NCBI GenBank assembly: GCA_963514005.1
Contig: OY740808.1
Coordinates: forward strand, 12,524,001-12,588,000
Direction: 5' to 3'
DNA length: 64,000 nucleotides
From: Raja brachyura
Lineage: Eukaryota
The notes beneath the pieces were generated by a model. That model did not search any database. It was not told the origin of the DNA and was given only the letters and a program-made list of their open reading frames with translations. Within the stretch, counting starts at the first letter, position 1; the number at the start of each line of letters is the position of its first letter. Positions 16,523 to 64,000 of the stretch are shown piece after piece. The translations under genes and the position numbers were made by a program.

Positions 16523-16845
16523 TTACCAACAGGTGGATTTGGCGATGTTTGTCTCCAGCGGGTTAGCCTGAGTCTCGTGTTTAACCACACAAGAGTAAAG
16601 CTCGTGGGAGTCCCAGACTGTGGCTGGCAGAGTCAGGTAACTGCTCGCACTGAACGTGTTGTCCGTCTCCTGCTGGATTCGGCTGGTCTCAACACCGTCA
16701 CTTCTTGCATTGCCGTCCACGGTCCACTTAATGTCCACAGCTCCCGGATTAAACCCACTCACCAAACACACCAGGGTGGCGCTGTTCTTTCCCGTGATTT
16801 CCTCCGCTGATGGTCGGAGAACGGACACTGTGGGAGCGCGTGGGT
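16523..16845 (-). CDS. Ig light chain constant exon, cluster 1 (type II/lambda-like)
   Basis: C1-set domain NPRAPTVSVLRPS..ATLVCLVSGFNPG..W..SSYLTL..YSCVVKH..STCW; acceptor ttcaaacag at 16846-16847; 323 nt, phase matches the J donor. Confidence 0.96.
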
Positions 16846-17277
16846 CTGTTTGAAACAAGGTTTTGCAGTATTATTAATAGTTGCGTAAGTATAGAAATAA
16901 TAATATTTGCATGACACAAAATCTAATTTTGCAACAATGTCAAACATACTATTTATCGCATTCTAAATTGTTTTAGAGATATTCCACATGATTATTCTTG
17001 AACTGTTCCACATTAACCTTGAAGTTTATATGCCTTTTTTCGAAAGTTATAATTTTTTGAAGTTCTAATTTAGCTCAGATTTCCCAATTAGGACAATGAA
17101 TCTTGCTCACTTCACTCAGCGGCACCAACAAAAACAAAACGCTCTAAGACATCGCCTGGAATAAAACTGATTTTATCTGAGGTGGTTCCGAAAGTTATGG
17201 TGCAATGTAAATTTTTTAAGTTATTTTTCAAGTTAAAATATTCGCTATCCTAGTGATTCCAGAATGCCCAGCGAGTA

Positions 17278-17653
17278 TGACGGTCACTCCAAACGAATAT
17301 CACCGTCCTCTCGTCGATGACGCCTGTGCGTGACTTTATTTAACGCGGGAAGACAGGTGCACAGACAGCCACCACATGGTCCTTGACAAATCTGGGTCAG
17401 AATCCAGTGGCATGGAATCCAAGACAACCAGGGACCCTTTTTCTGCTGCAGCCTTCATCAGCCTTCACAGCCGTCGTGACGCTGCACTAAAGTCTGCCTG
17501 TTCCACCGTTGAGGTCTTGGTTGAATTGCTCTTTGTCAGAGACCTCTCCCTCGAACTTACAGCCACGGGCGACCCTCCTAGCATCATAGCTCCAGACGGC
17601 ATCGCTCTCAGGACCACACAAGCTTCTCCACCACGACAGGATGACAATCCACG
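17278..17653 (-). mobile_element. Short RTE-derived non-autonomous element in the J-C intron
   Basis: Minus strand begins cctgtcgtggtggagaagcttgtgtggtcc, resembling RTE/Rex3-type 5' UTRs; absent from the paralogous intron at about 36535. Confidence 0.5.
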
Positions 17654-19030
17654 ATTACATTTCACAACATAACACATTGATCCCGGAATTTATAATGACG
17701 CAAGGAATTCAACAACACATCAACATCAACTGAAAATGATTGACCGCAGTATTTCAATAATATTGAGAATCTATAGGAGGAATAATTAAGCAAGCATTTG
17801 AAAGCATAAACTAATTGTTTAAGAGTCTCGACCCGAAACGTCGCCTATCTCCTTCGCTCCTTAGATGCTGCTGCACCCGCTGAGTTTCTCCAGCTTTTTG
17901 TGTAACCCCCTGTTTAAGCTAATAATTGACAATGTCAGGACGTTCGCTTTGGTTCTGCGTTTTTGTTTGTTTCCGGCGCAACCGGCGATTCTGGTTAAAT
18001 TTTGATTCCAATAGAAGAGCGAACACTATTGGAATGCCCCGACTCCCTTCAGCGGCTAATTAAATACACATTACACCATTCAAACTAGGGTTTAAACAGT
18101 TTAACAATATAAAATAAAAGCAGGATAAATGTGATAGTAGTCTTCTCGGGATATGGCTAAATTATTTGAACATCTGAAGAAGCCTGTTCTAATTGACTGA
18201 CTGAATAATTTGTTTGTTTTCACGTTGCTTCTATTTCACTGGGCGCCAAAGGAAAACATCCTCTAACTACAGTCAGATTCCATATACCGGAAGCACTGTT
18301 CCTCCAGAGGGAAATGTAAGGACAGAAAAATGGCGCAAGGCGACTAATGCACAGCCGGCAGGAATTGACATTATTATTACCTTATAAATTTGCACTTCTA
18401 CTCTCGATACCGAAACCCACGTCAGGGAAAATTAAATACAATCTCGTGAATTGTTGTAACAGTTCCAATCTTGTGCACATGCCTAATACAAGTTTACCAA
18501 TCCATATACAAACAATTCAAAGCGATATTCCAGGCGCCTGACAGGTTATTGGGTTTGAACCGATAATTCTGAGAAATGCACTTTCTTTATCTATACATGT
18601 TCATAATTTTAGGAAGACTCCAAGAGGGTCGAGTAATGCGCAGCTCTCGGGCATGCCAGAGTTCGCGATGGGGCATCAACCCAAAGTAAGTGCTATTATT
18701 GAAGGTGCGTCTTCTAATAGAATCATTCGTGCCATCAAAAGAAGGAAGACAAGCTTCTTTACCGCCGGCCTATTTCCTATCCTGGTTGACAATTGTTAAT
18801 TAATCGTTTGAAAAGTAATTAAGAATGAAAAATGTACACAGCCGAAAAGGCTTTTGCCCCTCCCATATCGTTACTTCTATTAATTTTCAAAAAAAAACTT
18901 GATTTTAGCCGTATATTTAGAAAAGATAGGCCTTAAAACACTTTTATTTGAACCATTAATTAAGCGACACAAAACTAATTACCTTTCACTGCAGTATCAA
19001 ACACCCAAAGAGTGAAGATATTTTACTTAC

Positions 19031-19375
19031 TGCCAATACCCAGCCTCGTTCCTTTGCCGAAGATTACAGCACTTTTCCACACAGCACAGTAGTAGTCAGC
19101 AGCGTCCTCCGACTGCACGTTCGATATTGTCAATGTTGCAGTGTTGCCTGACACTGATCCGGCGAAACGGTCAGGAACTCCAGAGCCTCTGGTAATGCTG
19201 CTGCCCGACCAATAGTAGAATAGAAACCTCGGCGCTCTTCCAAAAATCTGTTGGTACCAGGAAACAGTGGTACTACCTAAACTTTCGCCAGACATGGTAC
19301 AGGGTATTTGCCCGTTTTGTCCCGGAGACACGGACTGTGAAGACGGTTGATTTAGTGTAACCTCCGCGTTTATAC
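19031..19375 (-). CDS. Germline-joined Ig light chain V-J exon, cluster 1
   Basis: (C)INAEVTLNQPSS..C..WYQQ..GVPDRF..EDAADYYCAVWKSAVIFGKGTRLGIG; acceptor cttccag, donor GTAAGT; V and J contiguous with no RSS. Confidence 0.96.
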
Positions 19376-19498: not shown

Positions 19499-19547
19499 AA
19501 ACTGCGGAAAACGCCAATGCATAGACTACACGGACCCAGCAAGACAT
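19499..19547 (-). CDS. Ig light chain leader exon, cluster 1
   Basis: MSCWVRVVYALAFSAV plus 1 nt; donor GTGAGT; 49 nt, splices in frame to the V-J exon. Confidence 0.93.
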
Positions 19548-19599
19548 TGTAAATAACTGAGTGGGGAGCGCCTGGTGAAGTGGTACACACGTTTTTCTC

Positions 19600-19725
19600 G
19601 GGGTCTCTTATGAACCGTGTTGCGAGGCGTCATTGGGTGTTCATATGCAAAACAATCAAATCACTACGAACGTTGCGCCAATCAGAAGTTGCCAGATTCT
19701 TCTTGTGTCAAATTATTCCCATTTA
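19600..19725 (-). promoter_or_regulatory. IgL cluster 1 promoter
   Basis: TGACG half-CRE (19628-19632), octamer-like TTTTGCAT (19645-19652), CCAAT (19678-19682); block conserved upstream of cluster 2. Confidence 0.6.
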
Positions 19726-22033
19726 GCTAGGTAAATATCCGAATTCTAATTGTGTATTCCTGTACGATTTAATATATTTTCAAACACATCCAAGATATCA
19801 TTTTGATTGAAATGAGACATTCATTATGCCCGAAACGTCACCCATTCGTTGAATCCAGAGATGCTGCCTGTCCCACTGAGTTACTTCAGATTTGTGTGTC
19901 CATTTCCATTATATTTTTTCATTTATTTTGAACCCTTTTCGGTGCGGTTGCACAATGCGTATATTAAAACAAAACGTGCTTATCGAATAAACCCATGATA
20001 ATATCCGCCGACTTCATTCATTTATAAAAAAATGAAGAGATACATTCCATGTGGAGAGTGTTTTAGAACTGCTGAAGTCCTGATCTCATGGTGTGGCCGC
20101 ACTGTGCGCGATACGTTCTTTAGTTGCATATTGATTTTTGAAACTGGTGAGCATTTTGGTGACGATGGTTTATCGAAGTTTTCTAAAAGCACAAGGGAAT
20201 AAACAACGGATTGCAAATTAATTTTGAATTTGTAAAATTGGCAAATTTGTAGGTCTTACCGTGTATTTATTATAAATCACTGTCAAATTTAATGTAATGG
20301 TTTTGCAGTAAATTTGGAAAACATGATTTCGTGCAGCACCCACATTTGAATCGCCTGCTTACTTTGTTCGTAAAATTGACGTAATGAGTTGGAAAAATTA
20401 CAAAAATATTTAATCGACCTCAGGAGAGTTTTATGTGTTTAAAAAAAGTCAAATGTGTCGGCGGTTCTGGATTGCCTTGTCATAAATTCCATCAACCTTA
20501 ATTCGACATGGGAAATTATATTTACACGGAACCAGCGTTGCATCACACTAGATTTTATAGAGCAAACCAGTGGCTCTAATTATACCGATAATGTTAATTG
20601 AATTTCATGGATTACCCTTGCCATGGTATTAACAGCATGAGAATCAACACTAAAGACTTGCTTCCAAAATTATTCGACTCCTCAGTACTTCTGAATGCTT
20701 TCGCTGTTGCAGCGTGGAAAATATTCCTGTAATAGCTTGGGATGGTTACGCATACTCAAATGGATGTTAACAAAATATTACTTGAAATTATGACATAAGA
20801 ATACGTTTCAAGGGCGCGAGTATCACACCCCTGTTTTGCCAATTACCAATGTGCTTGCCACAGCTAAATTCTCCTCTCATTTCCTTACATGAAGGGTTTC
20901 CCATCATAAACTGGACAAATTGGAGAATTTTCTCAGCTTGCCCAGATCAGGCAGCTCTAACAGCAATCACGTGGGCAAACTTCAACCAGAGCAATATAAT
21001 CCGATTGATTGACACCCCCATTCTCTGCACCTGTGTTTACTCATTCCAAGGAGTACTGTATCGCGACGACAGAATTTTATTTTTGACCCGCAGTTACTCT
21101 AGCTTTTTGTGTCTATCTTTACCATATACAACATGTATTGCAATTACTTCCCTAAAATCCGCGGCCAACACTCCCATGCCAACCAAGATAGAAGTAAAGG
21201 GTGGGCATGGGAGCTACACTGTTGCGATACAAGTCACAGACCACGTAGAATTGGGAAATGTTTTGCCCAGCTTTCCGATGGCTGGAGATAGACACAAAAA
21301 ACTGGAGTAACTCAGCGGAACAGGCAGCATCCCTGGAGAGAAGGAATGGGTGACGTTTCGGATCGAGACCCTTCTTCAGCTTCCGATTGCTGGGCCTGTC
21401 TTGGAAAGCCCTTTCCAATAATACGGTGGGGGTTCTAACGACAGAATATTATTGTGACCCCAGAAGGACGCACATGAGCACATTCTGAGGAGTAATTAGA
21501 GATGTGTCGCAAGTACTCACCTTACAAGAAAATTGGATGTATTGATGGATGAAGTGGTTCGTTTTGCTTGGCATATTTCCCAAGGGCGATATGGTACGAT
21601 AAGATACGATAGCATTTATTTATCCCAGGAGGGGAATTGGACTGCCAACTGTCATAAAATACATGGAGCACATATATTTCAGTTGTAATGCGTTTCAGGA
21701 ACAATGCGACTTGTGAAAATTGCAGGAACACACAGGCTTTGGAAGACGTAAAAATAATCTGTTTGTTTTGGAAACAGAAGCGGAGGACAGAAAAGTACAG
21801 CTGTCGTGCAAGTCTTGCTAAAGCTTTGCAGCATAGTATTTCTGCAGTAGCTATAATGTAACTCTACGTGCTAACATTATGAATGACAGTGAGAGAGAGT
21901 GAGCGCCACAAAGAGAGACTAGCAACAAGTGGAGACACTCAAAGGATACATTTTGAAATAACGCATTGAAGAGAGAGGGTTGAGACTTTCAAGAAAGGTG
22001 AAAGTGGAGTAGATGCACAATTAACTGCAGATA

Positions 22034-22328
22034 GCGGCACGGTAGCGCAGCAGTAGATTTGCTGCCTTGCAGCGATGCAGCGCTGGAGGTTCGATACCGA
22101 CTACGGGTCCAGTTTGTACGGAGCTTGTCCGTTCTCCCCGTGACATCGTGGGTTTTCTCCGAGATCTTCGATTTCCAGGGTTGTATGTTAATTGGCTTGG
22201 TATAAGTGTAAATTGTCCATTGTGTGTAGGATAGTGGTGATGTGATGGAATCGCTGGTCGATGCGGACTCGGTGGATCGAAGGGCCTGTTTCCACGCTGT
22301 ATCTCTAAACTGAACTAAACTAAACTAA
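22034..22328 (+). mobile_element. tRNA-derived V-SINE/HE1-like SINE
   Basis: A/B-box-like head (ggcacggtagcgcag..ggttcga), V-domain gttctccccgtg..tgggtttt, CR1-like tail with (aaact)n. Confidence 0.8.
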
Positions 22329-22349
22329 TAGCTTCATAATATCATAAGT

Positions 22350-23455
22350 TATAATATCATAAGAGTCGAACAGCAAGGAAAAAATTCCTTCGGCCAACTT
22401 GCCCATGTCGATCTACATTAATCGCCTGACTACATTAATCGCACTAGCCCGCGTTTGGCCCATATCCCGCTAAACTTTTACTGGCTATATACCTGTCGAA
22501 GCGTCTTTTAAATGTTGTGCCTGTCTCGAACTACTTGCTCTGGCTGTTCAGTCCATATCTCACCATCCTCTGTGTGAAAACGTTTCGCCCCAGGTTCCCT
22601 TTGAACAATTCTCCTCTCACCTTAAACTTAAATCCTCCGTTTCTTGATTCCCCTACTGTGGGTAAAATACTCTACATTTACCTTTTCTATTCCCCTCATG
22701 ATCTTAAACACCTCGATAACACGACTCATCATCCTCCTACACTCCAAATCCGAGCCGGCCAACATCTCCCAATAGTTCAGGGCTGCATCTCATGGCAACA
22801 TCCTAATAAATCTTCTCCTATATCACTAAGCACAATAGTCCAACTGCAGTCTTGGTGACATATTTTACAACTGTAACATAACATCACAACCTCTAAACAA
22901 AAACACCCCCCCCCCACACACACACACACACACAGGGCCAGCTATCCACTGAGAAGACCCTGCCCTGGTTTGAACTTCCCAAAATGCATCACGTCGAAAT
23001 TATTTGCATTAAATCCATTAACCATTCCTCAGCCCACTTATCCAACTGTTCAAGTTTATGCTATAATTGTTGATAACTATCTTTGCCATCTACTATACCA
23101 GCCACTTTCTTGTAATCTGCAAATTTACCAATCATGCCTTCTACATTATCATCCAAATCGTTTATGTAAACCAAAAGCAACAATGGGGCCAGTAGTGACC
23201 CCCGGGGCACACCGCTGGTCATAACCCTGCAGTCAGAAAAACAATCTTCCACCATCACCGTCTCCTTCCTTCCATGAAGCCAATTCTCTATCAAGTTGGC
23301 TAGAGCTCTTCGGGTTTCTTATGAGCTAACAGTCCAGAGCAGCCTACCATGTAAATGTTTTCCTGAAGTCCATATAAACAACATCTACGGCTTTGCATTC
23401 GTCAAGAAGTCCATATAAACAACATTTACAGCTTTGCATTGGTCAATCTTCTTCA
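22350..23455 (-). mobile_element. Decayed CR1 fragments, including a 41-bp tandem duplication at 23365-23446
   Basis: ORF 23061-23294 (SGVPRGSLLAP..INDLD..KFAD). Confidence 0.75.
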
Positions 23456-23884
23456 TGCTGGAATCTTCAGTGAAACAGCTCTGCAGTTGCTCAGTGGGTT
23501 AGTCAACATCTTGGGAAGACATAGTTTATGGTCTTATGGCATTGTTTATGGTCAGGACTTTCTTCATTCTGAGTTATTCGGAGAATGAGGGAGAATAGGC
23601 TCAGAGAATATTCGTATTCATTGGGAATACAGATTTCTATAACTTGTATCGTTGACAACTTAATGAATTATTAAAGCAATAAAAAAAACCTGTAAAATAA
23701 ATAGAAATAGGGATTTAAATATGGCTTTATAGTTTTATATCGGAGTAAAAGGGCAGTGCATAGAAGCTGTAACTCATGAGTAACGGGATCACTGTACCCC
23801 AAACAATTACATCTGTGCGGAATCTTCTCAGTTATGAAAATGTTGCTTCCAAATAGCTGAGTTGGTGGCACACTGTACACAAAG

Positions 23885-26490
23885 TCGACAATGCATAGGT
23901 GTAGAATTGGGCCATTCGGTCCATCGAGCCTCATATGCCATTCATTCAAGGCTGATCTATCTTTCACTCTCAATCTCCTGCCTTCTGCCCATAACCTTTG
24001 ACATCCTTACTAATAAATAATCTGCAATTCCCACCTTACAATACCTAATTCGGCCTCCACATCTGTCTGTGTATGGATTTCACTAGCCTTTAAATGAAAA
24101 AAACCTTCTTCTCATCTCCAAATGTCTGTCCTTTTATTCTGAGGCTGTGTCCTCTGATCCTTCACTCTCCCACTCGTGTACGCATGCTATCCACATCCAC
24201 TCTATCGAGGACTTTCACTATTCAGCAAGTTTCAATGAAGACCCCCCTCCCCCCCCCCCCCCCCACCTCCATCCACAACCTAAATTCAAGCGAATAAAAA
24301 ACCAGTGCCGTCGCACATTAATTATACATTAACTAATTACCCCCTGTATTATTCTCATAAACCTCCTCTGGAGCCTCTCCAACGCCAGAGGATCATTCCT
24401 CAGATTTGGGGACCAAACTGCTTACTATACCCCAAAGGTAGACACAAAATGCTGGAGTTACTCATCGGGACAGGCAGCATCTCTGGAGAGAAGGAATGGG
24501 TGATGTTTCGGTTCGAGACCCTTCTTCAGACTCCAGTCTCGACGAAACGTCACCCATTCCATCTCTGCAGAGATGATGCCTGTCCCGCTGAGTTCCTCCA
24601 GCATTTTGTGTCTCCTTTGACTTAAACCAGCATCTGCAGTTCTTTCCTACACTATTCTCCAAATGCAGTCTGACCAGCACCTCATAAAGCCTTAACATAA
24701 CATTCCTGTTTTTATATTATAATCCTCTGGAAATATTTGCAAACATTGCATTTGCCTTCCTTACTACTGTTTCACCGTGCAAATTCATATTTTAGGAATC
24801 CTACACCAACACTCCTTGGTTCCTTTGCACCTCTAATTTCGGAATAATTTCCCCATTTAGAAAACAGTCTACGCCTTTATTCCGACCATAAAAATGAATG
24901 ACTGCTCATGATGTTACACTATATTCCATTTGCCATTTCTTTGCCCACTCTCCCGAACTGTCCAATACGTTCTGCAAAGTCCCTGCTTTCTCTACGCTGC
25001 CTGGCCCTCCACCTGTGTTTGTATCATCCACAAACATGGCCACAAAGCCTTCACTTACCTCATCCAAACCATTAATATATATCGTGGGGATCAGCGATCT
25101 ATGTGGAACACTAGTCACTGGCAGCCGAGCGGAATAAAATTCCTTTTATTCCCACTCTTTGCCTTCTGCCATACAGCTAACCTTCTATCCGTGATATTAT
25201 CTTCCCTCTAATACAGCGGGCCCTAATCGTCTTTAGCAGACTCACATGCAGCTGCTTATCAAGTGCCTTCTGAAAACCCGTCAACAACATCCAGTGTTCA
25301 TCCTGCTATTTACTTCCTCAAAGAATTCCAACAGGCAACATTTCCCATTCACAAAACCACACTGACTTCTGCCAAATGTATCATGTGCTTCTAAGTACTC
25401 AGAAACCTCACCATTTTTAATGGACTTTAAAATCTTACCAATCACTGAAGTGAAGCTAAGTGGCAAATAGTTTCCCTTTTTTCGCTTTGCTCCCGTCTTG
25501 AGGTGCAGAGTAACATTTGCAATTTGCTAGTCCACTGTGACCACTTCTGACCCCAGTGATTTTTGAAACACCCCACAAACACGACCACAATCTCTAAAAC
25601 TATCTCTTTAGAACACTGGGGTGCAGCACATCTGGTCCAGGTGATGTATTCAACTTCAGACCCAAGCACCTACTCAGTAATATCAATTCCACTAGTTTCT
25701 GCCCCAACTCTCTTGAAGCCACCTCTGTGAGGTTCGATGAAAAAACATATTAAATTAATCTGACATTTATTTATTCCACATTATTCCTTCTCCAGCGTCA
25801 TTATCTAGTGGTCCAATGTCTACGCTTCCCTCTCTCTTATTCGTTATATAGCTGAAGAAACGTTTGCTATCCTCTTTTACATTAGTGGCTAGCTTAACTT
25901 TATATTTCATTTTTTCTTTACATATTGCTTTTTTAGTAACTTTGTGTCAATTCCTCTCTCCATATAAACTCTCTTCCTCTTTGGAATGAAAAATCATGCA
26001 TCTTACGAATTATTCATGGAAACCCCTCCTATTGCAGCTCCTCTGTCGTTCCTGCTTGGATCCTTTTCCATTCAACTTTAGCCAGCTTCTCCCTCATGTC
26101 TCTGTAGTTACCTTTATCTAACAGTAATACCGACACATCTGATTTCGTCTTCTCCCTCTCAAACTGCAGGTTCAACTTCATCATATTATGGTCACCGTCT
26201 CCTGGGGATATTTTAAACTTAAGGTTCCTAGTCAAATCCAGGTCATTACACAATGCCAAATAAAGAATTGCTTTTCCCTAGTAGGCTCGACATAAGCTGC
26301 CCTAAGAAACTATTTTGAAGGCACTCTACAAATTCCTTCTCCTGGGATCCAGTACCAACCTTAAATATCCCAATCTACCTGCATATTGTAATCCACATGA
26401 CCTTTGCATCCCCTGGTGTAATTTGTACGCTACATTCTGGCTACTGTTTGGAGGCCCGTACATAACTCCAATCAGGGTATTTTTACAGTT
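23885..26490 (-). mobile_element. Decayed CR1 (EN-RT) with internal deletions
   Basis: ORFs 24906-25118, 25281-25466, 26029-26259 and 26326-26565 all resemble CR1 ORF2. Confidence 0.8.
24437..24650. mobile_element. Inverted pair of Penelope-derived termini (hairpin, MITE-like) inserted in CR1
   Basis: 24440-24520 is the reverse complement of about 24536-24613; imperfect 13-bp flanking repeat actataccccaaa/actattctccaaa. Confidence 0.7.
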
Positions 26491-27054
26491 GCAGTTACCA
26501 AGTGTGATGAGCCAATGTGGGGTAGTATTACTAGGACAACCTAAGAGGAAGGAATCAGTCCACATTGATTTTGTATTCGTGCAATTTCAGTTAAAGACCA
26601 AAAGACACGGCGCTGAGATCCGAATACATCAAAGCTCGGATGTGATGCATAATCCTTAATCGTTAAACTGTCCATTTCAAAGGAAAACTAAGACAGAAAG
26701 ATGGATTGATGACCTGCTCGAGGCATCGTGATTGTCAAATGTAGTTTGCACGTGGTTTATGTTTTCAGGAAAGGCACACTGTTAGCGTAACGTCATGATT
26801 TACACCGTCGTGAATAGCACCTTCTCGAATTGCTGCACACGTTTTGGTGACGGTACATCCCTAAACCCACCATAAATACCGTTCTTGGATTTACTTCTAG
26901 CAGTAAGGAAGAAAAGGTGGTACGCTGACATGTAAGAGTGGTATACGATTAGAGAGGAAGCATTGGGTGCTGGCAACCTTTTCTTTGACAGTAGGGTAGT
27001 AACTCACCAAATGTACCCAGACGCTGAATGCTATTAGAGGTCAGAAAGAGAGGG

Positions 27055-27990
27055 AGTTGTAGATTCCCATAGCACAGAAATACTGAAATCCCGGCGGCTC
27101 ACCATGTCTATCAACTGTTAATCATCGAAATGAATAAACTATCCATCAACTGTCTTTCCACATTAATATTATTTACTAAAATTCGGTCTGTAATCTATCA
27201 CAGATTGTCAATTCAGATGTTCGTCCAGAAGCTTCCTAAATATTTTGAGAGTATCTTCGTCCACCATCTTCTTGCGCAGTGCATTTCAGATGGCAACCGC
27301 TATTTGGATGAGGAATCTCTTCCTCAGATCACCGCTAGTTTCTCATTGTTCATCTTAGACTTGTGCCCTCCAGGCTTGCACACCTCTGCTATGAATATGT
27401 GCCTTATTGTCTGCGCTATAGATGTCCCTCATATTTTTATATCTCAATCATGTTTGTAAACAGCCTCAAATGCACCTAACAAAACGAAACCGGCATATCG
27501 CGGTTTTCCTCATAACTGAAACATTCCATCACAGGCAACATCAAGATGAAGATTCTGTGCAATTTCTCCAGAATAGTCCTGTGCGTTTGATGCAGTGCTG
27601 ATCAGAACGGCACCGAGTCTTCTAGCTGTGACATAACCAATATTTTAGAAATGTGTATGTAGTCCTCTGTTTTCTGATATCGATACACTGGACAGTTTCA
27701 GTGTTTCATAAGCCTTCTTTAGCATGTTATACCTGCCCTGCCATTTGCATGGAACTTTAGATTTGCATATTAACGAATGTTGTTGCTCAATGCAGGGGCG
27801 TTACCATGCATGATTTGTAACTTACATTTATTTAATACCGCAATATACAACAGAACATAATTATCAGGATTAAATTCTACTTGTCAATATCTTGCACATT
27901 TGACCAGATGATCAACATCAATCTGCAAACTGACTGCAATCTTAATATTAAAAATGCCACGAATTTTCGGGCCATCAACAAACTTACCAA
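27055..27990 (-). mobile_element. Ancient CR1 remnant that is part of the duplicated cluster unit
   Basis: Paralogous to 49070-49490 plus 54165-54397; weak CR1 3' similarity. Confidence 0.55.
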
Positions 27991-46975: not shown

Positions 46976-47358
46976 GACTTACAATGTTAAATTTGGTAAT
47001 TAAATGTTGAAGACAGCGGGTTCAAGAATTGTGAAATGTTTCCGTGCTTCATGTCAAAGGAAAACAAAGGCGGAAAGATAGACTGAGGAGCTGATGCTGT
47101 GATTTTAAAACACTGATTTAAAAAAGGTTCTTTGACATTGGTTTATTTTTTTCAGGATAGTGGCATTGTGCGTCATTCACCACACCGCCCTTAAGAAAGT
47201 GGTAATGAGCACCTTTGTGAACTGCTGAGTGGAGGTACAACACCAAACCCATTCGGAGTACCAGGTGTAATGCCAGCAATACTGATGAAATGGTGGTAAG
47301 CTGCCATTTAGGAATGGTAGTTGATTGGAGGGCGTCTTTGGGTGTTTGTAACCATTTA

Positions 47359-51225: not shown

Positions 51226-51229
51226 CCAC

Positions 51230-54140: not shown

Positions 54141-54397
54141 CAGTTTGAGAAATTAAATAAATATCCAAATGCGCAAACTCTCCATTCTTGTTATGATATG
54201 GTGCGCTGATCAGATCTGCACAGAATACCCTAGAGTCTAGATGTAGCCTCATCAATATTTCATAAAGTTGTACCAAAACCTCTCTTTTCTTATAGTGTAT
54301 GCACAGACTGAGGAGGGCCATGAGCCATTTTAACCACTTTATACCTGTTATGCTACTTTCATGCAGGTGTGGACTTGTTTATTAAGATCCTTTGCTT

Positions 54398-57330
54398 GGA
54401 ATAAATTGGAATAAAAGCGAAATTATGTCGTTAAAACCACAGGATGCGAGACACTTGAAAAATTCAAGTATTTGGGTATTCAAATTACGAGAAGACACAA
54501 CTCATTATTTAGTGCCAATTTTACGCTACTATTAAATAAACTGAATGTTATGATTACATTTTGGAAAACGCTCCCGCTCCCATTGATAGGTAGAACTAAT
54601 GCTATAAAAATAACTTTCTTAACACAATTAATATAGTTGTTTCAAGCGATCCCAATATATATTCCAAAATATTTTTTCAAAAAACTGGATTCTAATATCA
54701 CTAATTTTATATGGGATTATAGAGCACACATAATTCAATGAAAGCATTTGTGTAAACCTAAAGAATTTGGGGGTTTATCATTACCTAACTTTACGTATCA
54801 CTACTGGGCAGTGCATATTAAGAACATAATGTACTGGTGGGATAGTTCCACTCACCAGTCGGAGTGGATAAGAATGGAGAAGGAGGAGTGTTTCCCGTAC
54901 GATATAGGAACGATCTTGTTCTCACCGATAAAATTGAATAGTATAATATATAAGAACCCAATTATTCACAATACAATAAGAATTTGGAAACAAATACAAT
55001 AATCCTTGAAATTAAATAATCTACCAGTACTAACCCCAATATTGAACAATCCTGCATTCAAATCATCCCTTATCGACAAAACATATAAACATTGGGATAG
55101 ACTGGGGATTAGGAAAGTAGGGGATATGTATGAATTGGGCAAATTGTTATCATTTCAACAATTAAAATCAAAATTTAAACTGAATGATAATCAATACTTT
55201 AAATATATACAGATATGTGACTTTATGAAGAAATACATACATAGATTTCAAACTATATTTTTAGACCCTTTAGAAGGAGCAATGAATATTAAAGCTGATT
55301 CACAAAAACTAATATCATATTTTTATAATAGTATATTAAATAGAGAATTATCCTCTACAGAAGCACTAGGAGAAGATTGGGAATGTGAACTAATGATAAA
55401 GATCCCGAAAGATAGATGGGAAAAATATCTGATGAACACACATAATTGTTCCATTAATACAAGACGTAATTTAATTCAATTTAAATTATTACATAGACTA
55501 TATTATTCAAAACTGATGTTGAATATATTCTACCCAAACATCACTCCCAGATGCGATAAATGTTTGTTTCAAAATGCCAATATAACACATTCATTTGTAG
55601 GATGTACAAAGTTGAATAAGTTTTGGAGCGATATATTTGATATATTTACAAAGCTCTTTAAGTTAAGAATAGAACCTAATACGGAATGGATTATATTTGG
55701 AATAATAGTAGAAGATATCAATTTAAACAAAGACCAAAAAGTGTTCTTTAATTATGGGTTAATAATTGGAAAGAAATTGATACTTAAATTTTGGAAAAAT
55801 ACAGCTATACCAACTATTAAAATGTGGGTTAGGAATATGACGGACATAGCTCACCTTGAAGAAATGAGACTCCGCCTAATAGATAAATATGACCAATTCT
55901 TAAGGAGTTGTAGGTATGTTACAAAACTTACCTTGAGCAGCGCTGCAGTTCTGCCGCTCCCCGTGTGTGCGACTTTGGCGCCTTTCAGAGGGGGGCGGGC
56001 TTAAAGTGCCGTTTTTCCACAGGCAGGGAAAATCGATGAATGTCGGGCGATTTCGTTGCGGAAGAAAAATCGCCCCGACATTTCATGAATGAAGGTATTT
56101 TTAAATTACTCTAGATTATTTATTAACTAGAGTAATTTAAAAATCACCTTCAAAAGCCGTCAGCGCCGACAACCGGAAGGATTTTGCGTAGGGGAGAAAA
56201 AAAGGTAAATAGTTTATTTTTATATTAAATGTTGGTTTTTCGGGAGGCTTTAATAACATTTTCATGTTGCGAAATAGGGTCCAAAAAATGTATGAACCAA
56301 CAGTATTTTTCTTCCCGACTTCACCGCTAACCGCAACGTTCCTATCCACCGCATTCCACTAAAACCCACTCGCTAGTTGATTTAAATGGCCATTAATTTA
56401 CAGGAATCAAACACTAAATTCCTTCCATTTGGCCCAGAAATTCATGAAAATGAGATTTAAAAATTATGTTATATTGTGGATTATTGTGTGAATGTTATTT
56501 GGACCCTTAAGCAATTTGAAGAAAGTTTATTTTTTCTTAAGAAATGGATAGATGTTTAGATCTACTCATTGAATTTTGTAATTAGCTACAATTAGATAAC
56601 TAACTAATTATATGCTTTAATTTCAGGTCATCCAAGTAAGATTGTTTCATATTTGTTTCAGAATGCTTCAATCTATAATAACTGATAATTTCATTGAGTT
56701 CTCTTAATTTTTAAGAAAGTTATGGGCTTTTAACTGTTCCAGATCACAGCTTTTGAGTTAAGTCAATTGAAAGGCAATGGGGAACAAGATGCTAATTTCC
56801 GAGTATGAAAATGGCCATAACTTTCTTAATACTGAAGATATGAAAGTGAATTAGGTGTCATATTAAACTTCTTTTTATGCTTTATCTGATGGGATAAATT
56901 GCAGACTTGATTTTTAAAATCTCAAAATTTTGTAACATTGCTAGGAGTTGGTTCCCTTTCATCGACTTTTTAGAATCATGTGATGCAGCAGTACCGTAAA
57001 GATTGCTGATTTCAGGTCAGGTTGTGGATAGATTTATATCTCCGAACAAAGATTTAAAAATTTATTTTTTAAGGTTTTTTTCTCCTATTTCTACTTTCAA
57101 CCTTTTCTTCTCCTATATACACACTTCACATCTTTCTATTTTCTACTATCTAGTTTTCCTCTTTTTCTTCTCTCTATTTTCTGTCATTTTTTTTACTTCC
57201 TTTTCAAAAACATAAAACTAGAGCTTGTACATAGATTGTATTACGTTGTGACATAGTTGGCACCTAAAATTAGGTACCACTGTATTGTTTTGTATTGTAT
57301 TAACTTCTAATGAAATAAATTTAAAAAAAA
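54398..57330 (+). mobile_element. L1/Tx1 3' fragment with poly(A)
   Basis: FKYLGI, GGLSLPNF, QFKLLHR, CDKC..H..C; 14-bp TSD AAGATCCTTTGCTT at 54384-54397 and 57331-57344. Confidence 0.92.
55911..56943. mobile_element. Non-autonomous hAT-like DNA transposon nested in L1 ORF2
   Basis: TIRs TAGGTATGTTACAAAA / TAGCAATGTTACAAAA; 7-8-bp TSD (A)GGAGTTG; removing it restores L1 ..FLRSWFPFIDFLES. Confidence 0.8.
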
Positions 57331-58054
57331 AAGATCCTTTGCTTCCTCAATACCATCGGGCCGAGGTGCTTTTTCGTTTAAGTTCGTGAGCCAAATCATG
57401 TAACTACATGAATTTTCAACATATTGTGTTAAAATATTATATAAATCATACCTGAAACTCGTCAAGAACAAAACCTGCACATATTTTTAAAAATGAGAAA
57501 AACCTCCAATTTTCCGAGTCGTAATTGTTCAATCAAAGTACGTTTGACTTTGAGTCGGATGCCAATTGACCAATCACACGCTTTGTTTCAGGCTAGCTAG
57601 ACAGGGAGCCCACATCAATTCGTGGGACCAGTGAAACGTTGTGAATCAACTGGAACAGAAAGGTAAGATCTAAAGACTGAATTTATGAAAATTAATCTGT
57701 ATGGACATTAATTAATTTAATTTCAACCTCTTATAATGTGAAAAAATAGATCTGGAAGCTGAAGTTGATGGCCTAAACTATGCCTATCCGTAACAAATTA
57801 AATTAAAAGTTGTCACTAATGCCAGCTTGTTGAACTGAAAGAGGTCTTCTTTAACATCTAATCTCGGTGCTTCCTGCAATCATTTACTTGGAAAAAGTGC
57901 TCCGACTGCGGGACCTATGCACATAACATAGTGAAGCCGCGGTCTCCAGTACGAAACGGCCGATTCTGGAACTGGGAGCCGGGGAGTGAGTTTGGATCCT
58001 CTCTGCGGGGGGCTGTACATAGTGCCGTCCATAGCGGCGATTGCGGAGGGATCA

Positions 58055-58435
58055 AGTGCAACTGTCTCCCGGCCATTCAGGACATTTTCCACCATCGGTG
58101 CCTGCGGAAGGCACACAGCATCATCAAGGACCACAGCCACCCAGCACGCAGACTGTTCTCCTTGTTACCGTCAGGCAGACGATACAGGAGCATGGCTGCA
58201 CGTACCACCAGACTTAAGAACAGTTTTTACCATCAGGCCATCAGGCTTCTGAACTCATAAACACATTTTATGTCATATATGTTGATTATCTTATTATTGT
58301 CTTACCAGTGTCATTTATATCTTATTTTATCCTTGTTATATTATTGCTGAGGTGACCCGTTGTCTTGTCAAACACATTTTATTGTACCGTTGACCCTGTG
58401 TTAACCTTCATATGACAAATAAAACTGAAATAAAA
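58055..58435 (+). mobile_element. Rex1/Babar-like 3' fragment
   Basis: IIKDHSHP..FSLLPSGRRYRS..NSFYHQAIRLLN. Confidence 0.8.
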
Positions 58436-58648
58436 AGGCCCTGACCATGGGAGAACAATTGACTGCACTTTGTTGCCTTCCATCGCAGTGAGAAATGCTC
58501 AGAAATTGTGGATGTTTATGTTGAAATCAATTGATGTTTGTGAGCTTGAACTTTAACTAACTTATCTACGGTAGTAACTTAAAGTGTAAGTCTCATTAAC
58601 ATTTGGAAGAGTTGACATTTTATGAATTGAGGTCCATGCAGACTTAAG

Positions 58649-61108
58649 TGCTATGATATGTTTTTTTTCTGTAGCTATTGTAGATTGCTTACTAACCAAT
58701 TGTTGTGCTTGTTAGTAGTAGCTTCGTTTACTATGCGATTTATATTACCAAGAGCTTGCTTATGTAATTCAGTCTGAGTAGCTGCTAGTTACTGTAATGT
58801 CCTGCAGACCAATGCTGTAAGTGGACTTTAATAAATATGTGTTGTATCTTGATGTGTGTACGACTCGACTCATTACATGGTGACAGAAGTGGGATGCGAA
58901 CCCATGCCTCCAGTTGGCACGGGAGTGAAATGTAATGTCATCTTGTTATCTGAGTAAAAAAATACCCATAATGCTGACCAAGTTGAAAAGGCCTCGGCCA
59001 CGCTACGGGCCTATAGGGGTGATGTTCTACACCCGCTTGGAGAAACTGATTTGAAATGCGTCATAGACTCGCAGTCTCATACCCTGAAGTTTTATATCAT
59101 CAAGGGGGGATTCTGAAACTCTGCTTGGTATCAATGCATGCCACGATCTAGGCCTAGTCAACTTTGGCCGCACTGCCCATCAACTCTTTCTCGCTGAGGG
59201 CCCCACTCAACAACTACTCTCTCAATATAGATAACTGTTTAACGATGAGCTGCCCCTCAAATACAACATCACCGTTAATCCCAAAGTCAATCCTGTGGTT
59301 CGAGCACCACATCATGTTCCCCATGCCATGCGCGACAGAGCACAGACACAATGAGCTAAAGCGGATGGTCTCCCTGGGTGTCATTGCTGAAGTTACTGAC
59401 CCATCTGACTGGGTTTCCACCATGGTGGTTGTAACGAAGGAAAGCAAGGAAGAAATCTGTATCTGCATCAACCCATGGACCTCAACACAGCAATCAAATG
59501 GCCACACTACCCTAAGCGAATGATAGAGGAAGTTGCTGCTTAAATAGGCAACGCATCCCTGTTTTCCGTTCCTGGATGCCAAAAGCTCATTTTGGCAGAT
59601 TCCACTGGACCAAGAATCTTCCAACCTTACTATGTTCGGCACCCTCTTCGGCCATTACAAATTCCTAAGAATGCCCTTAGGCATCAACTCTGCCAGTGAG
59701 GTTTTCTAGTGCACCATGGAACAACTGTTTGCGGGGTATCAATGCACCATCATTGTTGATGACATTCTTGTTTGCGACGAAGTCAAAGTGGTGCGACTTG
59801 GCTGAGCATCTGAAGAGAGTGCTGGACCATGCCAAGGACATTCAGCACAAACTCAATCCCCTGAAGTGCAAGTTTCCGGTCCCGGAAGTTACCTACGTCG
59901 GCCATGTTTTCACAAATGATGGTCTCAGACCAGACCCATCAAAAACTTGCTATCAATGAAATTCCAGTTCCTACTGATGTTATGAGTTTACAAAGGTTCT
60001 TTGGAATGGTCAACTACCTGGGGAAATTTATGCCAAACCTCAGCGATATATCTGCCCCCCTGCGGGAACTGACACTGAAAGATGGTCCTGATAGAAACAG
60101 ACCACCAGCCGCTGGTCACCATCTTGAATAAACCCATTCACGCCGCTCCGGCTCACCTGCAACGGATGATGATGCAACTGCAGCGTTTTGATTTCAACAT
60201 TGTCTACAAAAAAGGCATGGATATGCACATAGCTGACACACTATCAAGGGCCCCGTGCAAAACCAGCGAACAACAGCCCTCTGAACAGGAGCAGTTCTCA
60301 GTAATGTTCCGTATGTTCCCACTGATTGCCGGAGCAGCCTGGCAGAACACAAGGCTGCTGACGAGACTTTACAATTGCTGTCCGCAGTCATCCGGCATGG
60401 CTGGCAGGATAAACAACACAGCACCCCACTTGCAATCCGCCCTTACTTCTTGGTTCGCGACAAACTGGTGTTACAGGACGGGATTATAGTCTAGGGTCAC
60501 AAAACAGCCGTCCTCGGGGACAAGTACTTCGATGCCGTCCGCAGGGGCCATCCCAGTGTGGAGGCAACCTTACAACGGGCACAGAGCATATTTTACTGGC
60601 CTGGCATGACCAAGTACATACATGACAAAACTGAAGTCTGCGCCATCTGCAAAACCCTGACGCCACACCAGCAGATGCAGCCCTTACTGCCACACCGGGT
60701 TCCTCCTCTACCATGGTCCACGGTAGCCACTGACATATTCGAATGGCATGGGAAACACTATCTGGTTCTTGTCAACTCATATTCGTGCTGGTTTGACATT
60801 GATCTACTCTAAATCATCACATCTGAAGCAGTTATCCAGAAGTTGCAACGCCAGTTCTCCGTGCACGGTTCCCCTGCACGCCTTCTATCTGACAACGGCA
60901 GTCAGTCCAGCTTCAGCAAAAACTTTGCTCAACGATGAGACTTTCGACATATCACCAGCAGCCCTGAGTTTCCTCAGTCCAACGGACTCGCTGAACGGGC
61001 AGTCCGCAGCGTAAAACAATGAATGGAGCGTTCTTACCTTGCTAAATCTGACGTCTATCTGGACCTGCTCAATTTAAGGAACATTGCCAGGGATCCCATA
61101 CTGGGATA
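58649..61108 (+). mobile_element. Gypsy LTR retrotransposon remnant (5' LTR, PBS, deleted pol)
   Basis: LTR TG..CA at 58649-58877 with AATAAA; PBS TGGTGACAGAAGTGGGAT at 58878-58895 (tRNA-Leu-like); YVGHVF, GMVNYLGKF, ETDHQPL, IFYWPGM..CAIC, VATDIF. Confidence 0.85.
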
Positions 61109-61199
61109 CTATAATCGCATCCAACCAAGAATTCTTTTCTTTTCAATCCTGATTACCCAACCAATTATCTGAAGATGAAATCAGGCAGAAATATAAAAT

Positions 61200-62730
61200 C
61201 GAGTTGGAAATAACTTAAGAGGTCGATTAGAAGAGCCAAACTGGGGCATGAAACGGGTTTGTCGAGCTAGATTAAAGAAGTTTGCAAGGCTTTTTATACC
61301 TAAATTAAATGCAAGAGGATAACCAGAAAGATGGTAACTCGAGGATAAAGGGAGGAATTTGTGCTTTGAGTCAAGGGATATAAGCGAGGTATTAAATGAG
61401 TGCGTTGTATGTCTTTTCACCAAGGAGAAGGACAAGGAGGAGAGTGAGATCAATGTGGCGAATATTCATATGCAAGGGCACTGTGTGATTAAAAAGTGGG
61501 TGTTGGGTGTCTTGAGGGGCAGTGTGCACGAATGGACAGATTATTGAGAGACACAAAAGACGAGTTTGCAGGAGCCATGACAAAGATCTCTGCACCTTCT
61601 CCAGCAGTTAATAAGTTTACAGATGACAGCTAGATTGTTTGGGTTGCGGACAGTGAGGAAGGCTGTCAAAGTATACAGCGGGATAGAGACTAGGTACAAA
61701 AATGAGAGATGAAATGATAGATGCAGATTAACCAGAGCATTGAAGTGCTGCGGGAGGTATCGATTGTAAGGGTAAATATACGAGATGCTGCCTGAGCCGC
61801 TGAGTTACTCAGTATTTTGTGTCTACTTTCGATTAATGTATTGATGTACAGAGGAATTTCGGGAACCAAGTCTATCTCCCTATAATATTTCCGTTCTGAG
61901 GGGAAATGGTAATGACTCTCTGCCCTATCTATGAATCTCATAACTTTATATATTTCTAGCAGGTCTTCCCTCATCGTCAATGGTTACAGAGAAAACAATC
62001 CAATTCTGTCCAACCTCTGCTCGTAGTTATTACCCCTAATTCAGGTATCATGCTGGTAAACATCCTCTGCGCCCATTTCTAGGCCTATACTATAAGGAAA
62101 CACTATATCTCCCTCAGTGGCAACACTACTATACTGAGTGGTAAGAAGGCATATTGTATGTTTTCCTTCATTGGGCAGGGCATTTAGGATAAGGACAGGC
62201 AAGTCATGATGCTACTTTTAGGACTTTTGTTAGGCTGCATCGCGGTACTGCCATCATTTCTGATCGCCCCAATACTAGATGGAAGTCTAGGACTTGGAAA
62301 GAGCGCAGAGGATGTTTACCAGCATGATACCTGAATTAGGGGCATTAACTACGGGCAGAGGTTGGACAGAATTGGATTATTTTCTCTGTAACCGTTGACG
62401 ATGAGGGGAGACCTGCTAGAAATATATAACATTATGAGATTCGTAGATAGGGCAGAGACCATTTCCCCTCAGAATGGAAACATTAAGGACTAGATGACAT
62501 AGGTTCAAGGTGAGAGACGCATGCACATTGTATATACAGAGGTTGGCGAGGGCCCGGAAGGCGTTGGCGGGGGTGGTGGTGGCGGCACAAGCAACAGTGG
62601 CATTTGTAAGACTTCTGGATACGGATCATGTGCACGCAGATAAGATTTGGTTTTGGCCTCATGTCGGCAGAGACATGGAGCGCCGAAAGGCTTATTCGTG
62701 TGCTGTGCTGTACTATGTTCTGCGCTTTGT
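61200..62730 (+). mobile_element. Old decayed CR1 downstream of C3, containing an inverted duplication
   Basis: Paralogous to 32980-34510. Confidence 0.65.
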
Positions 62731-63535
62731 GGATACTGCAACTTTAGTTTGGACTCATCAATCAGGAGAAATAACGTCGGCATCTTTCCTGCCATGACCA
62801 CTAAGAGTTTGTCGGGAGCTGTGAGGTGTTTACACATTCTCCACGTGATGTCGTGGGTTGCCTCCCACATCCCAAAGATTGCGGGTTCATAGGTCAATTG
62901 GCCTCTGTAAAATTGCCCCCCGCCGTGTAGGGAGTGGATGAGAAGGTTGGCTGCACTTCTCGCAGCGTGCACTTATCCCACTAATCAGCTCAGCAGGAAC
63001 CAACCAAGAACTTCAGTACCTCTATTGGGCCAGGAAAGTAAAACCATATGTGATACTCCATGTGTGCTAGCGCCCTATGTAAAGGCAGAAAGAACGTATT
63101 TACTCTCACTCACCACCAGCCCCACCCATTTAATTCACAGATGAAATAGCTTGGAATTGCTAAGTGAATAGTATCAGCAAGGTCAAATTTAACGTTTACT
63201 GTCTGTCCTCGAATGCGTTTCGACATGAGCGCGCAATTTTGTTCGTGTGTGTGCGTGTGCGCGCGCGCGACTATATGAACCAACTTATAATCACACCAAT
63301 TTATAATATAACGTTCCGCACCATTTATCACCGCATCTTCCATAAAGTAATATAATGAAGGTTGATTAATTGATTTGATTTTATCTGATCAGAAATAAAA
63401 GTCAAAATTAAAGTCAAACAAATGTATTGCTCTTCAGATTGAATTATTGATTTTAGTCGAGAGTTGTATTTGAAAATGTTAGTAACTGTGGGTAAGCAAC
63501 AAAATAACCTGAATGTAATATTTAGACCACTGTCT

Positions 63536-63541
63536 TTTAAT
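63536..63541 (-). terminator. Candidate poly(A) signal ATTAAA of IgL cluster 3
   Basis: About 190 nt after the stop; conserved among clusters. Confidence 0.55.
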
Positions 63542-63732
63542 GAATATTTGTGAATGCATTCAACAGATTGAATAACATTGGAGTTTCAATTCCAACGAGT
63601 TGCAAAGAGCGAGACAAAGGACAATTTTATCGCAAATGCTAGTCGATAACAGAATATTTTTAGATCAATTTTTAACAAATGAAGGACGGAGCAAAACTAT
63701 TTTTCAGCTTGATTAGTTGGAATTTAGATGGT

Positions 63733-64000
63733 TTACAGACAGCTGGACCTGGCGATGTTTCGCTGCAGCGGGCAAGCCCGCGACTCGTGTTTAACCACAC
63801 AGGAGTAAAGCTCGTGTGAGTTCCAGACTGTGACTGGCAGAGTCAGGTAACTGCTCGCACTGAACGTGCTGTCCGCCTCCTGTTGGACTGGGCTGGTTTC
63901 GACGCCATCACTTCTCGCACTGCCGTCCACAGTCCACTCAATTTCCACAACTCCCGGATTAAACCCACTCACCAAACACACAAGGGTGGCGGTTCCCTTT
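63733..64000 (-). CDS. Ig light chain constant exon, cluster 3 (5' end outside the window)
   Basis: KGTATLVCLVSGFNPG..WTVDG..SSYLTL..YSCVVKH..RSSCL. Confidence 0.93.
   Translation of the reverse strand, partial: KGTATLVCLVSGFNPGVVEIEWTVDGSARSDGVETSPVQQEADSTFSASSYLTLPVTVWNSHELYSCVVKHESRACPLQRNIARSSCL

What the first reader, a model, noticed from the sequence alone, without database searches (positions are those of the whole stretch)
16523..64000. Tandem array of germline-joined (pre-rearranged) VJ-C light chain clusters
Seen: two intact L/VJ/C genes and a third C exon, all on the minus strand, with C exons about 19 kb and 28 kb apart. V and J are fused in frame without RSS, but the leader and J-C introns and promoters are retained, so these are not retrocopies. 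Established: type II/lambda light chains of cartilaginous fish are germline-joined. Inference: these are RAG-independent antibody genes whose exclusion must be regulated without rearrangement. The closely spaced local architecture is the informative part.
Basis: partly seen in the sequence, partly recalled or inferred. Interest (0 to 1): 0.8.

Follow-up and report, generated by a model that had tools for sequence, protein, structure and literature searches.

The report
Germline-joined lambda light-chain gene array

Summary
On the minus strand lie two complete leader / fused-VJ / C genes and the C exon of a third, which is cut by the window end. Cluster 1 spans 19547-16523 and cluster 2 spans 40502-35390; the third C exon ends at 63733. 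Stop-to-stop distances are 18.9 kb and 28.3 kb.

- **Gene structure:** V, CDR3 and J are one open exon. All splice sites are GT/AG, and no RSS occurs anywhere in the window.
- **Isotype:** The C exons are 72-78% identical to sandbar-shark lambda and to the published sawfish lambda reference. They sit inside that clade, next to annotated skate orthologues (Rhinoraja, Amblyraja; 86-92%).
- **Selection:** Frameworks and C exons show purifying selection, with replacement excess in the CDRs.
- **Gaps:** Gap 1 lies in the J-C intron of cluster 2, and its flanks are colinear with the cluster 1 intron. Gap 2 lies in the LINE-rich spacer; continuity across it is not shown, so the 28 kb figure is provisional.

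Reviews state that all lambda/type II genes are germline-joined in every cartilaginous fish studied. This is therefore a new member of a known kind. The tight head-to-tail spacing is the only mildly new part. Other first-stage notes of this scan report more such clusters elsewhere in the same genome.

The parts
19600..19700 (-). Cluster 1 putative promoter: inverted CCAAT (GATTGG 19683-19678), octamer-like TTTTGCAT (19652-19645), TATA-like CATAAG (19612-19607)
   Evidence: Sequence. Alignment with cluster 2 shows conserved blocks, but the octamer position is degenerate in cluster 2. Function is inferred, not shown.
19499..19547 (-). Cluster 1 leader exon (MSCWVRVVYALAFSAV + 1 base), donor GTGAGT
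   Evidence: Matches the N-terminus of skate lambda models P0035 and P0028.
19031..19375 (-). Cluster 1 fused VJ exon (345 nt): FR1-CDR1(8)-FR2-CDR2(7)-FR3-CDR3 AVWKSAVI-J FGKGTRLGIG, donor GTAAGT, phase 1
   Evidence: V-set E 5e-17; no RSS.
16846..19030 (-). Cluster 1 J-C intron (2,185 nt), holding a 96-nt high-copy SINE-like insert at 17815-17910 with target-site duplication CTTAAACA
   Evidence: In one search, contigs of organisms B and C skip 17815-17910.
16523..16845 (-). Cluster 1 C exon (C1-set, ends ...AKSTCW, stop TAA)
   Evidence: E 4e-25; 92% to Rhinoraja P0028, 91% to Amblyraja P0035.
16296..16324 (-). Cluster 1 poly(A) signal candidates, 204 and 227 nt after the stop
   Evidence: Cluster 2 has one at 216 nt and cluster 3 has one at 197 nt.
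19548..35389 (.). Spacer 1 (15.8 kb) between the cluster 1 ATG and the cluster 2 stop. Non-coding homology with cluster 2 extends about 1.5 kb upstream of the ATG (20743-21024); the rest holds transposon-like ORFs and no Ig exon
35390..35712 (-). Cluster 2 C exon (ends ...ARSGCL, stop TAA)
   Evidence: E 1e-24; 86% to Amblyraja P0032.
35713..39996 (-). Cluster 2 J-C intron (about 4.28 kb including gap 39044-39214), enlarged by repeat insertions
39044..39214 (.). Assembly gap 1, inside the J-C intron of cluster 2; not filled
   Evidence: Flanks are colinear with the cluster 1 intron.
39997..40338 (-). Cluster 2 fused VJ exon (342 nt; CDR2 one codon shorter; CDR3 AVWKDAYI; J FGKGTRLGIG)
   Evidence: (V-set E 1e-18).
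40454..40502 (-). Cluster 2 leader exon (MSCWIRAVYALAFSAV + 1 base)
40503..63732 (.). Spacer 2 (23.2 kb, including gap 2): LINE endonuclease/RT copies, a DDE transposase remnant, retroelement-like ORFs; no Ig exon
45692..45855 (.). Assembly gap 2 in spacer 2, at the junction of two LINE copies; continuity not shown
63733..64000 (-). Cluster 3 C exon, 5' end cut by the window edge (88 codons seen; ends ...ARSSCL; extra Cys in ...HESRACPLQ)
   Evidence: E 1e-22; 87.5% to Amblyraja P0032.

Best explanation
These are three head-to-tail members of the lambda (type II, NS3-type) immunoglobulin light-chain minicluster family of a skate. Each is a self-contained gene: promoter, split leader, one exon in which V, CDR3 and J are already joined in the germline, a J-C intron, one C exon and a poly(A) signal.

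Shown here: the gene anatomy, the absence of RSS, the isotype, old paralogy and purifying selection.

Inferred from the literature on this family: the genes are transcribed and spliced in B cells without any RAG step. The light-chain repertoire comes from the many germline paralogues that differ mainly in their CDRs, plus somatic hypermutation. Which cluster a B cell uses must be settled at the level of transcription or chromatin rather than by rearrangement.
For: - Anatomy and canonical splice sites.
- V-set and C1-set domains.
- No RSS in the window.
- No other Ig exons in the window.
- C exons are 72-76% identical to sandbar-shark lambda (P0065, P0077, P0089) and 78.5% to P0116 = XP_051887747, the lambda reference of PMC12227049.
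- In the C tree all sequences form one clade ordered like the species tree. C1 sits beside Rhinoraja P0028 and Amblyraja P0035; C3 sits beside Amblyraja P0032.
- The V tree gives the same partners for V1. The clusters are therefore old paralogues with orthologues in other skate genera.
- dS between clusters is 0.2-0.48. dN/dS is 0.28 in FR+J and 0.33-0.49 in C, against 1.59 in the CDRs (Fisher p about 0.01-0.04).
- The CDR3-J string CAVWK..IFGKGTRLGIG recurs in genome-derived models of skates, stingrays, manta and, close to it, ratfish.
- DNA contigs of four runs from three organism labels cover the locus, with no contig showing extra sequence between V and J.
- Literature: all lambda/type II genes are germline-joined in all species studied (PMC5192425, PMC4279169). 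Joined skate light-chain genes (type I) are expressed and apparently mutated (PMC2192082). Nurse-shark NS3 genes are non-rearranging, germline-joined VJ genes (PMC2435157).
Against: - No transcript evidence for any of the three clusters.
- The tissue of the DNA runs is unknown.
- The cluster 2 octamer position is degenerate, and its VJ and C exons are separated by an assembly gap.
- Cluster 3 is seen only as a C exon. It has an extra cysteine and the longest branch in the tree.
- No kappa, sigma or sigma-2 reference was in hand as an outgroup. V1's CDR1/CDR2 lengths (8/7) also equal the invariant sigma-2 pattern given in PMC5985310.
Confidence: 0.85

Rival explanations
1. The genes are structurally intact but silent or nearly silent relics. 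The expressed lambda chains come from other clusters of the array.
For: No RNA evidence. Degenerate octamer in cluster 2. Extra Cys and long branch in C3. In nurse shark some joined kappa-type genes are expressed mainly early in life (PMC2193156).
Against: Open frames, canonical splice sites and poly(A) signals are retained despite dS of 0.2-0.48 between copies. dN/dS is well below 1 in frameworks and C. Orthologues are kept in other genera.
Confidence: 0.1
2. Scaffolding error at gap 1: the VJ exon at 40338-39997 and the C exon at 35712-35390 belong to two different paralogous clusters.
For: A 171-N gap of estimated length lies in the intron. All clusters are paralogous, so colinearity does not prove identity.
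Against: Both flanks align in order and orientation to the cluster 1 intron. Distances are plausible once repeat insertions are allowed for.
Confidence: 0.07
3. They are sigma-2 (type I) light chains, which are also all germline-joined in skates, rather than lambda.
For: CDR1 of 8 and CDR2 of 7 residues in V1 equal the invariant sigma-2 lengths reported in PMC5985310. No sigma-2 reference sequence was available here.
Against: C exons are 72-78% identical to named lambda references and nested among them. The lambda CDR length ranges (3-9 and 3-7) include 8/7, and V2 has a CDR2 of 6.
Confidence: 0.03
4. The joined VJ is a somatic rearrangement captured because the assembly came from lymphocyte-rich tissue.
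For: The tissue of origin is unknown.
Against: Two clusters in one window are both joined. The CDR3-J sequence is shared with orthologues from other species' genome annotations. No split form appears in four DNA runs. The family is joined in all species studied (PMC5192425).
Confidence: 0.01

Closest known systems
Sandbar shark (Carcharhinus plumbeus) lambda / type II light chain, the founding germline-joined lambda (Hohman et al. 1993, cited in PMC2192082; proteins P0065, P0077 = AAC59643.1, P0089)
   Same: Fused VJ with a single C exon. C domain 72-76% identical, same C clade.
   Different: V belongs to the other old V-lambda family (47-52% identity; J ...FGRGTKLNL against FGKGTRLGIG here). 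Different order of fishes.
Annotated skate gene models 'immunoglobulin lambda-1 light chain-like' of Rhinoraja longicauda (P0028) and Amblyraja radiata (P0035, P0032)
   Same: Likely orthologues: V 84%, C 91-92% for cluster 1; C 86-87.5% for clusters 2 and 3. Same leader, CDR3 and J strings.
   Different: Other genera.
Raja erinacea type I (sigma-2) light-chain clusters, at least 89, all germline-joined (PMC2192082)
   Same: Skate; no combinatorial or junctional diversity. Differences between paralogues are concentrated in the CDRs with replacement excess, as seen here for V1 against V2.
   Different: Different isotype.
Nurse shark NS4 (kappa/type III) germline-joined genes (PMC2193156)
   Same: VJ fused in germline DNA, with introns and regulatory motifs kept.
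   Different: There the joined genes are a recent minority among split genes and are attributed to RAG activity in germ cells. Here the whole family is joined and the fusion looks ancient.
Nurse shark IgH miniloci (PMC2435157)
   Same: Minicluster organisation with many independent loci, and the same exclusion puzzle.
   Different: IgH loci rearrange and lie at least 120 kb apart. These light-chain clusters do not rearrange and are separated by only 16 and 23 kb of spacer.

Membership tests
Cartilaginous-fish lambda (type II / NS3) germline-joined light-chain minicluster | Minicluster anatomy: split leader, V-J, one C exon, each with its own upstream region | tested here: met
   Two complete clusters plus one C exon.
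Cartilaginous-fish lambda (type II / NS3) germline-joined light-chain minicluster | V and J contiguous in one open exon, no RSS | tested here: met
Cartilaginous-fish lambda (type II / NS3) germline-joined light-chain minicluster | C (and V) group with type II/lambda reference chains | tested here: met
   72-78% C identity to sandbar lambda and to Pristis XP_051887747, nested in that clade. Caveat: no kappa, sigma or sigma-2 outgroups in the tree.
Cartilaginous-fish lambda (type II / NS3) germline-joined light-chain minicluster | Joined state present in non-lymphoid (germline) DNA | tested here: inconclusive
   Four DNA runs from three organism labels show no split form, and the CDR3-J string is shared across species. 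The tissue of the DNA is unknown.
Cartilaginous-fish lambda (type II / NS3) germline-joined light-chain minicluster | Spliced transcripts in B-cell tissues; somatic hypermutation of the joined exon | not testable with these tools
Sigma-2 (type I) light chains, also all joined in skates | CDR1 of 8 and CDR2 of 7 residues in all species (PMC5985310) | tested here: inconclusive
   V1 has 8/7 and V2 has 8/6. The lambda ranges include these lengths, so the feature does not discriminate.
Sigma-2 (type I) light chains, also all joined in skates | C and V group with sigma-2 references | not tested
   No sigma-2 sequence was in hand. High identity to lambda references argues against it.
Processed retrocopy of a rearranged light-chain mRNA | No introns, poly(A) tail, no promoter | tested here: not met
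   Leader intron (123 and 115 nt) and J-C intron (2.2 and about 4.3 kb) are present with GT/AG sites.
Non-rearranging VJ-C1 receptors (UrIg/UrIg2, PRARP-like) | Several C exons, or a transmembrane/cytoplasmic exon, after the VJ exon | tested here: not met
   A single C exon ends in Cys-X-stop, with a poly(A) signal about 200 nt downstream. No further Ig exon follows.

The most novel reading that the evidence does not exclude
The tight head-to-tail array is itself the unit of regulation. Clusters only 16-23 kb apart would compete for shared control elements, so that one joined lambda gene is chosen per B cell without any recombination step.

A second, independent reading is also not excluded: the lambda VJ exon of cartilaginous fish may never have been split by the RAG transposon. 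It is fused in every species, with a near-constant CDR3-J from ratfish to skates.
Probability: 0.1. Interest if true: 0.6.

Novelty: new member of a known kind. Interest (0 to 1): 0.2.

Why it matters
Germline-joined lambda genes show that an antibody chain can be made with no RAG step. This raises the question of how one gene among many is chosen per cell.

The window adds a clean, base-level example from a skate:
- exact exon borders;
- spacers of 16 and 23 kb made largely of transposon debris;
- a duplicated unit of about 4.7 kb;
- old paralogues with orthologues in other skate genera;
- CDR-focused replacement changes.

A 2025 paper still says the genomic distribution of Ig miniclusters in cartilaginous fish is 'not well known' (PMC12227049), so a full map of this array would be useful descriptive work. 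It does not change any current view.

Tried and rejected
- **Single-exon word searches:** these found few relatives because of the length window. The V exon's best hits were mouse kappa V regions at 46-49%, which says nothing about isotype. I therefore searched with the shark homologue P0002 to obtain full-length named chains.
- **PDB sequence search with the C exon:** multi-domain heavy chains dominated. Not useful for isotype.
- **Perfect octamers in the J-C introns (16912-16905 and 35997-35990, minus strand):** considered as intronic control elements. Rejected because they are not at homologous positions and seven perfect octamers occur in the window.
- **The roughly 80-nt element shared at 94% by both J-C introns (17828-17907 and 37645-37724):** considered as a conserved enhancer and rejected. 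It is a very high-copy repeat. The cluster 1 copy has an 8-bp target-site duplication and is absent from the contigs of organisms B and C. The cluster 2 copy has different borders.
- **Co-inheritance of J type with V family:** 3 changes over 112 rows on a tree built without CDR3 and J. It shows cluster-wise evolution but cannot separate joined from split ancestors.
- **Bacterial-type promoter scan:** not meaningful for a vertebrate gene.
- **Rfam scan:** no match.
- **Steps not taken:**
  - The spliced protein was never joined; exons were searched separately.
  - The gaps were not filled.
Full report
**What is there.**
The ORF list and direct reading of the minus strand show three light-chain units.

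| Unit | Leader exon | VJ exon | C exon |
|---|---|---|---|
| Cluster 1 | 19547-19499 | 19375-19031 | 16845-16523 |
| Cluster 2 | 40502-40454 | 40338-39997 | 35712-35390 |
| Cluster 3 | outside window | outside window | beyond 64000 to 63733 |

- The leader exons encode MSCWVRVVYALAFSAV (cluster 1) and MSCWIRAVYALAFSAV (cluster 2), each plus one base.
- Leader introns are 123 nt (cluster 1) and 115 nt (cluster 2).
- J-C introns are 2,185 nt (cluster 1) and about 4.28 kb (cluster 2).
- Donors are TTT|GTGAGT and GCA|GTAAGT. Acceptors are pyrimidine-rich ...CAG. Both introns are phase 1.
- Candidate poly(A) signals lie 197-227 nt after each stop.
- Pfam calls the VJ exons V-set and the C exons C1-set.
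- tblastn with seven lambda chains finds no other Ig exon in the 64 kb.

**V and J are fused.**
In both VJ exons the reading frame runs from ...SEDAADYYC through CDR3 into J and on to the splice donor. The CDR3-J strings are AVWKSAVI-FGKGTRLGIG and AVWKDAYI-FGKGTRLGIG. A scan of the whole window, both strands, for a heptamer, a 12 or 23 spacer and a nonamer found nothing; about one is expected by chance. The introns are retained, so these are not retrocopies.

**The gaps.**
Gap 39044-39214 lies in the J-C intron of cluster 2, so no coding frame crosses it. Sequence on both sides aligns in the same order and orientation to the cluster 1 intron. The extra length in cluster 2 is repeat insertions. 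This supports the join, but it cannot exclude a join between two paralogous clusters.

Gap 45692-45855 lies in the spacer. On one side is a LINE reverse-transcriptase copy that lacks its 3' end; on the other is the 5' part of a different LINE. Continuity is not shown there, so the 28 kb distance to cluster 3 is provisional. I did not try to fill either gap.

**Which light chain.**
Single-exon word searches were limited by the length window. A search with the shark homologue P0002 gave 265 relatives. The 120 listed are nearly all labelled lambda-like or simply 'immunoglobulin light chain'. They include sandbar-shark lambda chains and chains from ratfish, elephant shark, dogfish, many sharks and many rays.

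| Window exon | Closest relative | Identity |
|---|---|---|
| C1 | Rhinoraja longicauda P0028 | 92% |
| C1 | Amblyraja radiata P0035 | 91% |
| V1 | Amblyraja radiata P0035 | 84% |
| C2 | Amblyraja radiata P0032 | 86% |
| C3 | Amblyraja radiata P0032 | 87.5% |
| C1 | sandbar-shark lambda | 72-76% |
| C2 | P0116 (Pristis) | 78.5% |

P0116 is XP_051887747, the Pristis lambda reference used in PMC12227049.

A C-domain tree puts all of these in one clade that follows the species tree: chimaeras, then sharks, then rays. C1 sits beside P0028 and P0035; C3 sits beside P0032.

A V tree shows two old V-lambda families attached to this C. The window's genes belong to the family with CAVWK..IFGKGTRLGIG, and V1 again sits beside P0028 and P0035. 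The source organism is therefore a skate. The three clusters are old paralogues whose duplication predates the split of skate genera.

No kappa, sigma or sigma-2 sequence was available as an outgroup. V1's CDR lengths (8 and 7) fit both lambda and sigma-2 as tabulated in PMC5985310. The lambda call therefore rests on the high identity to named lambda references.

**State of the genes.**
Cluster 1 and cluster 2 identities by segment:

| Segment | Identity |
|---|---|
| Leader exon | 88% |
| VJ exon | 81% |
| C exon | 88% |
| Flank, leader intron and 3' UTR | 72-75% |

Selection measures:

| Region | dN/dS |
|---|---|
| Frameworks plus J | 0.28 |
| C exon pairs | 0.33-0.49 |
| CDRs | 1.59 |

- The CDR excess gives Fisher p of about 0.01-0.04 on few sites.
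- dS between clusters is 0.2-0.48.
- This is the pattern reported for the joined type I genes of Raja (PMC2192082): functional paralogues that differ where antigen is contacted.
- Cluster 1 has an octamer-like TTTTGCAT, an inverted CCAAT and a TATA-like box upstream. In cluster 2 the octamer position is degenerate.
- C3 carries an extra cysteine and has the longest branch in the tree.

**Germline state and expression.**
The four runs laid are genomic: introns are covered evenly and no splice joints appear. They come from three organism labels. None shows extra sequence between V and J, and short contigs of organism C run from the J-C intron across J and CDR3 into FR3.

The same CDR3-J string occurs in genome-derived gene models of skates, stingrays and manta, and nearly the same in a ratfish chain. 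This is what inherited, not somatic, junctions look like.

**How it most likely works.**
Shown here: complete, selected genes that need no recombination to encode a light chain.

Taken from the literature:
- Lambda/type II genes are germline-joined in every cartilaginous fish studied (PMC5192425, PMC4279169).
- Joined skate light-chain genes (type I) are expressed and apparently mutated (PMC2192082).
- Nurse-shark NS3 genes are non-rearranging, germline-joined VJ genes (PMC2435157).
- Germline joining can arise through RAG activity in germ cells (PMC2193156).

Inferred: diversity comes from paralogue number plus hypermutation, and the choice of one cluster per cell is transcriptional.

**Architecture.**
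- The shared unit runs from about 175 nt after the stop to about 1.5 kb upstream of the ATG. That is roughly 4.7 kb in cluster 1.
- Clusters 2 and 3 share a further 1.7 kb downstream of C.
- Spacers of 15.8 and 23.2 kb hold transposon-like ORFs; in spacer 2, LINE endonuclease/RT copies and a DDE transposase remnant were confirmed by Pfam.
- All three units point the same way.
- This spacing is far tighter than the 120 kb or more reported for nurse-shark IgH loci (PMC2435157).
- PMC12227049 notes that the genomic distribution of miniclusters is not well known.
- However, consecutive RefSeq accessions for lambda models on one Pristis chromosome suggest that such arrays are already visible in public annotation.
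- First-stage notes of this scan (unchecked) report further joined clusters 38 kb and 268 kb beyond this window and on other pieces of the genome.

**Verdict.**
This is a known kind of gene system with new members, and interest is low.

Noticed in passing
window 17815-17910 (J-C intron of cluster 1): A 96-nt copy of a very high-copy SINE-like repeat (contig word depth in the millions), flanked by the 8-bp duplication CTTAAACA. Contigs of the related organisms B and C join 17814 to 17911 without it, so it is a young, lineage-specific insertion.
   Followed up: partly
window 37645-37724 (J-C intron of cluster 2), also 14198-14321, 19830-19908, 21283-21379, 24436-24613, 61782-61835: Further copies of the same repeat. 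The copy in the cluster 2 intron is 94% identical to the cluster 1 copy but has different borders, so it looks like an independent insertion.
   Followed up: partly
window 63733-64000: The C exon of cluster 3 has an extra cysteine (HESRACPLQ where the others have HETQAN/DPLQ) and the longest branch in the C tree. This may indicate relaxed constraint.
   Followed up: no
window 40339-40352: Two in-frame acceptor sites 12 nt apart precede the cluster 2 VJ exon (..TTTTTCCAG ATATTTTTCCAG). The downstream one matches the orthologues. The upstream one would add four residues to the leader/FR1 border.
   Followed up: no
window 16849-16874: A contig of organism C lacks 26 nt just upstream of the C exon acceptor of cluster 1. 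It may come from a paralogue.
   Followed up: no
window 42081-45498 and 45856-46876; 1-2700; 9200-12600; 29800-30700; 51097-53677: Several LINE copies (endonuclease plus RVT_1 reverse transcriptase, with a gag-like ORF1), some 91-92% identical to each other. Also a Tc1-like DDE transposase remnant at 47575-48384 and retroelement-like ORFs (no Pfam family matched) at 59100-61000.
   Followed up: partly
protein P0001: A 125-aa 'hypothetical protein' filed under Aeromonas veronii is a J-C fragment of a shark or ray lambda light chain (73% identical to C1). A 68-aa Salmonella entry (P0003) is similar. Both look like host DNA contaminating bacterial assemblies.
   Followed up: no
panel proteins: Two old V-lambda families share one C type across chimaeras, sharks and rays. 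J is ..TFGRGTKLNL in one family and ..IFGKGTRLGIG in the other. J type changes only 3 times on a V-only tree of 112 chains.
   Followed up: partly
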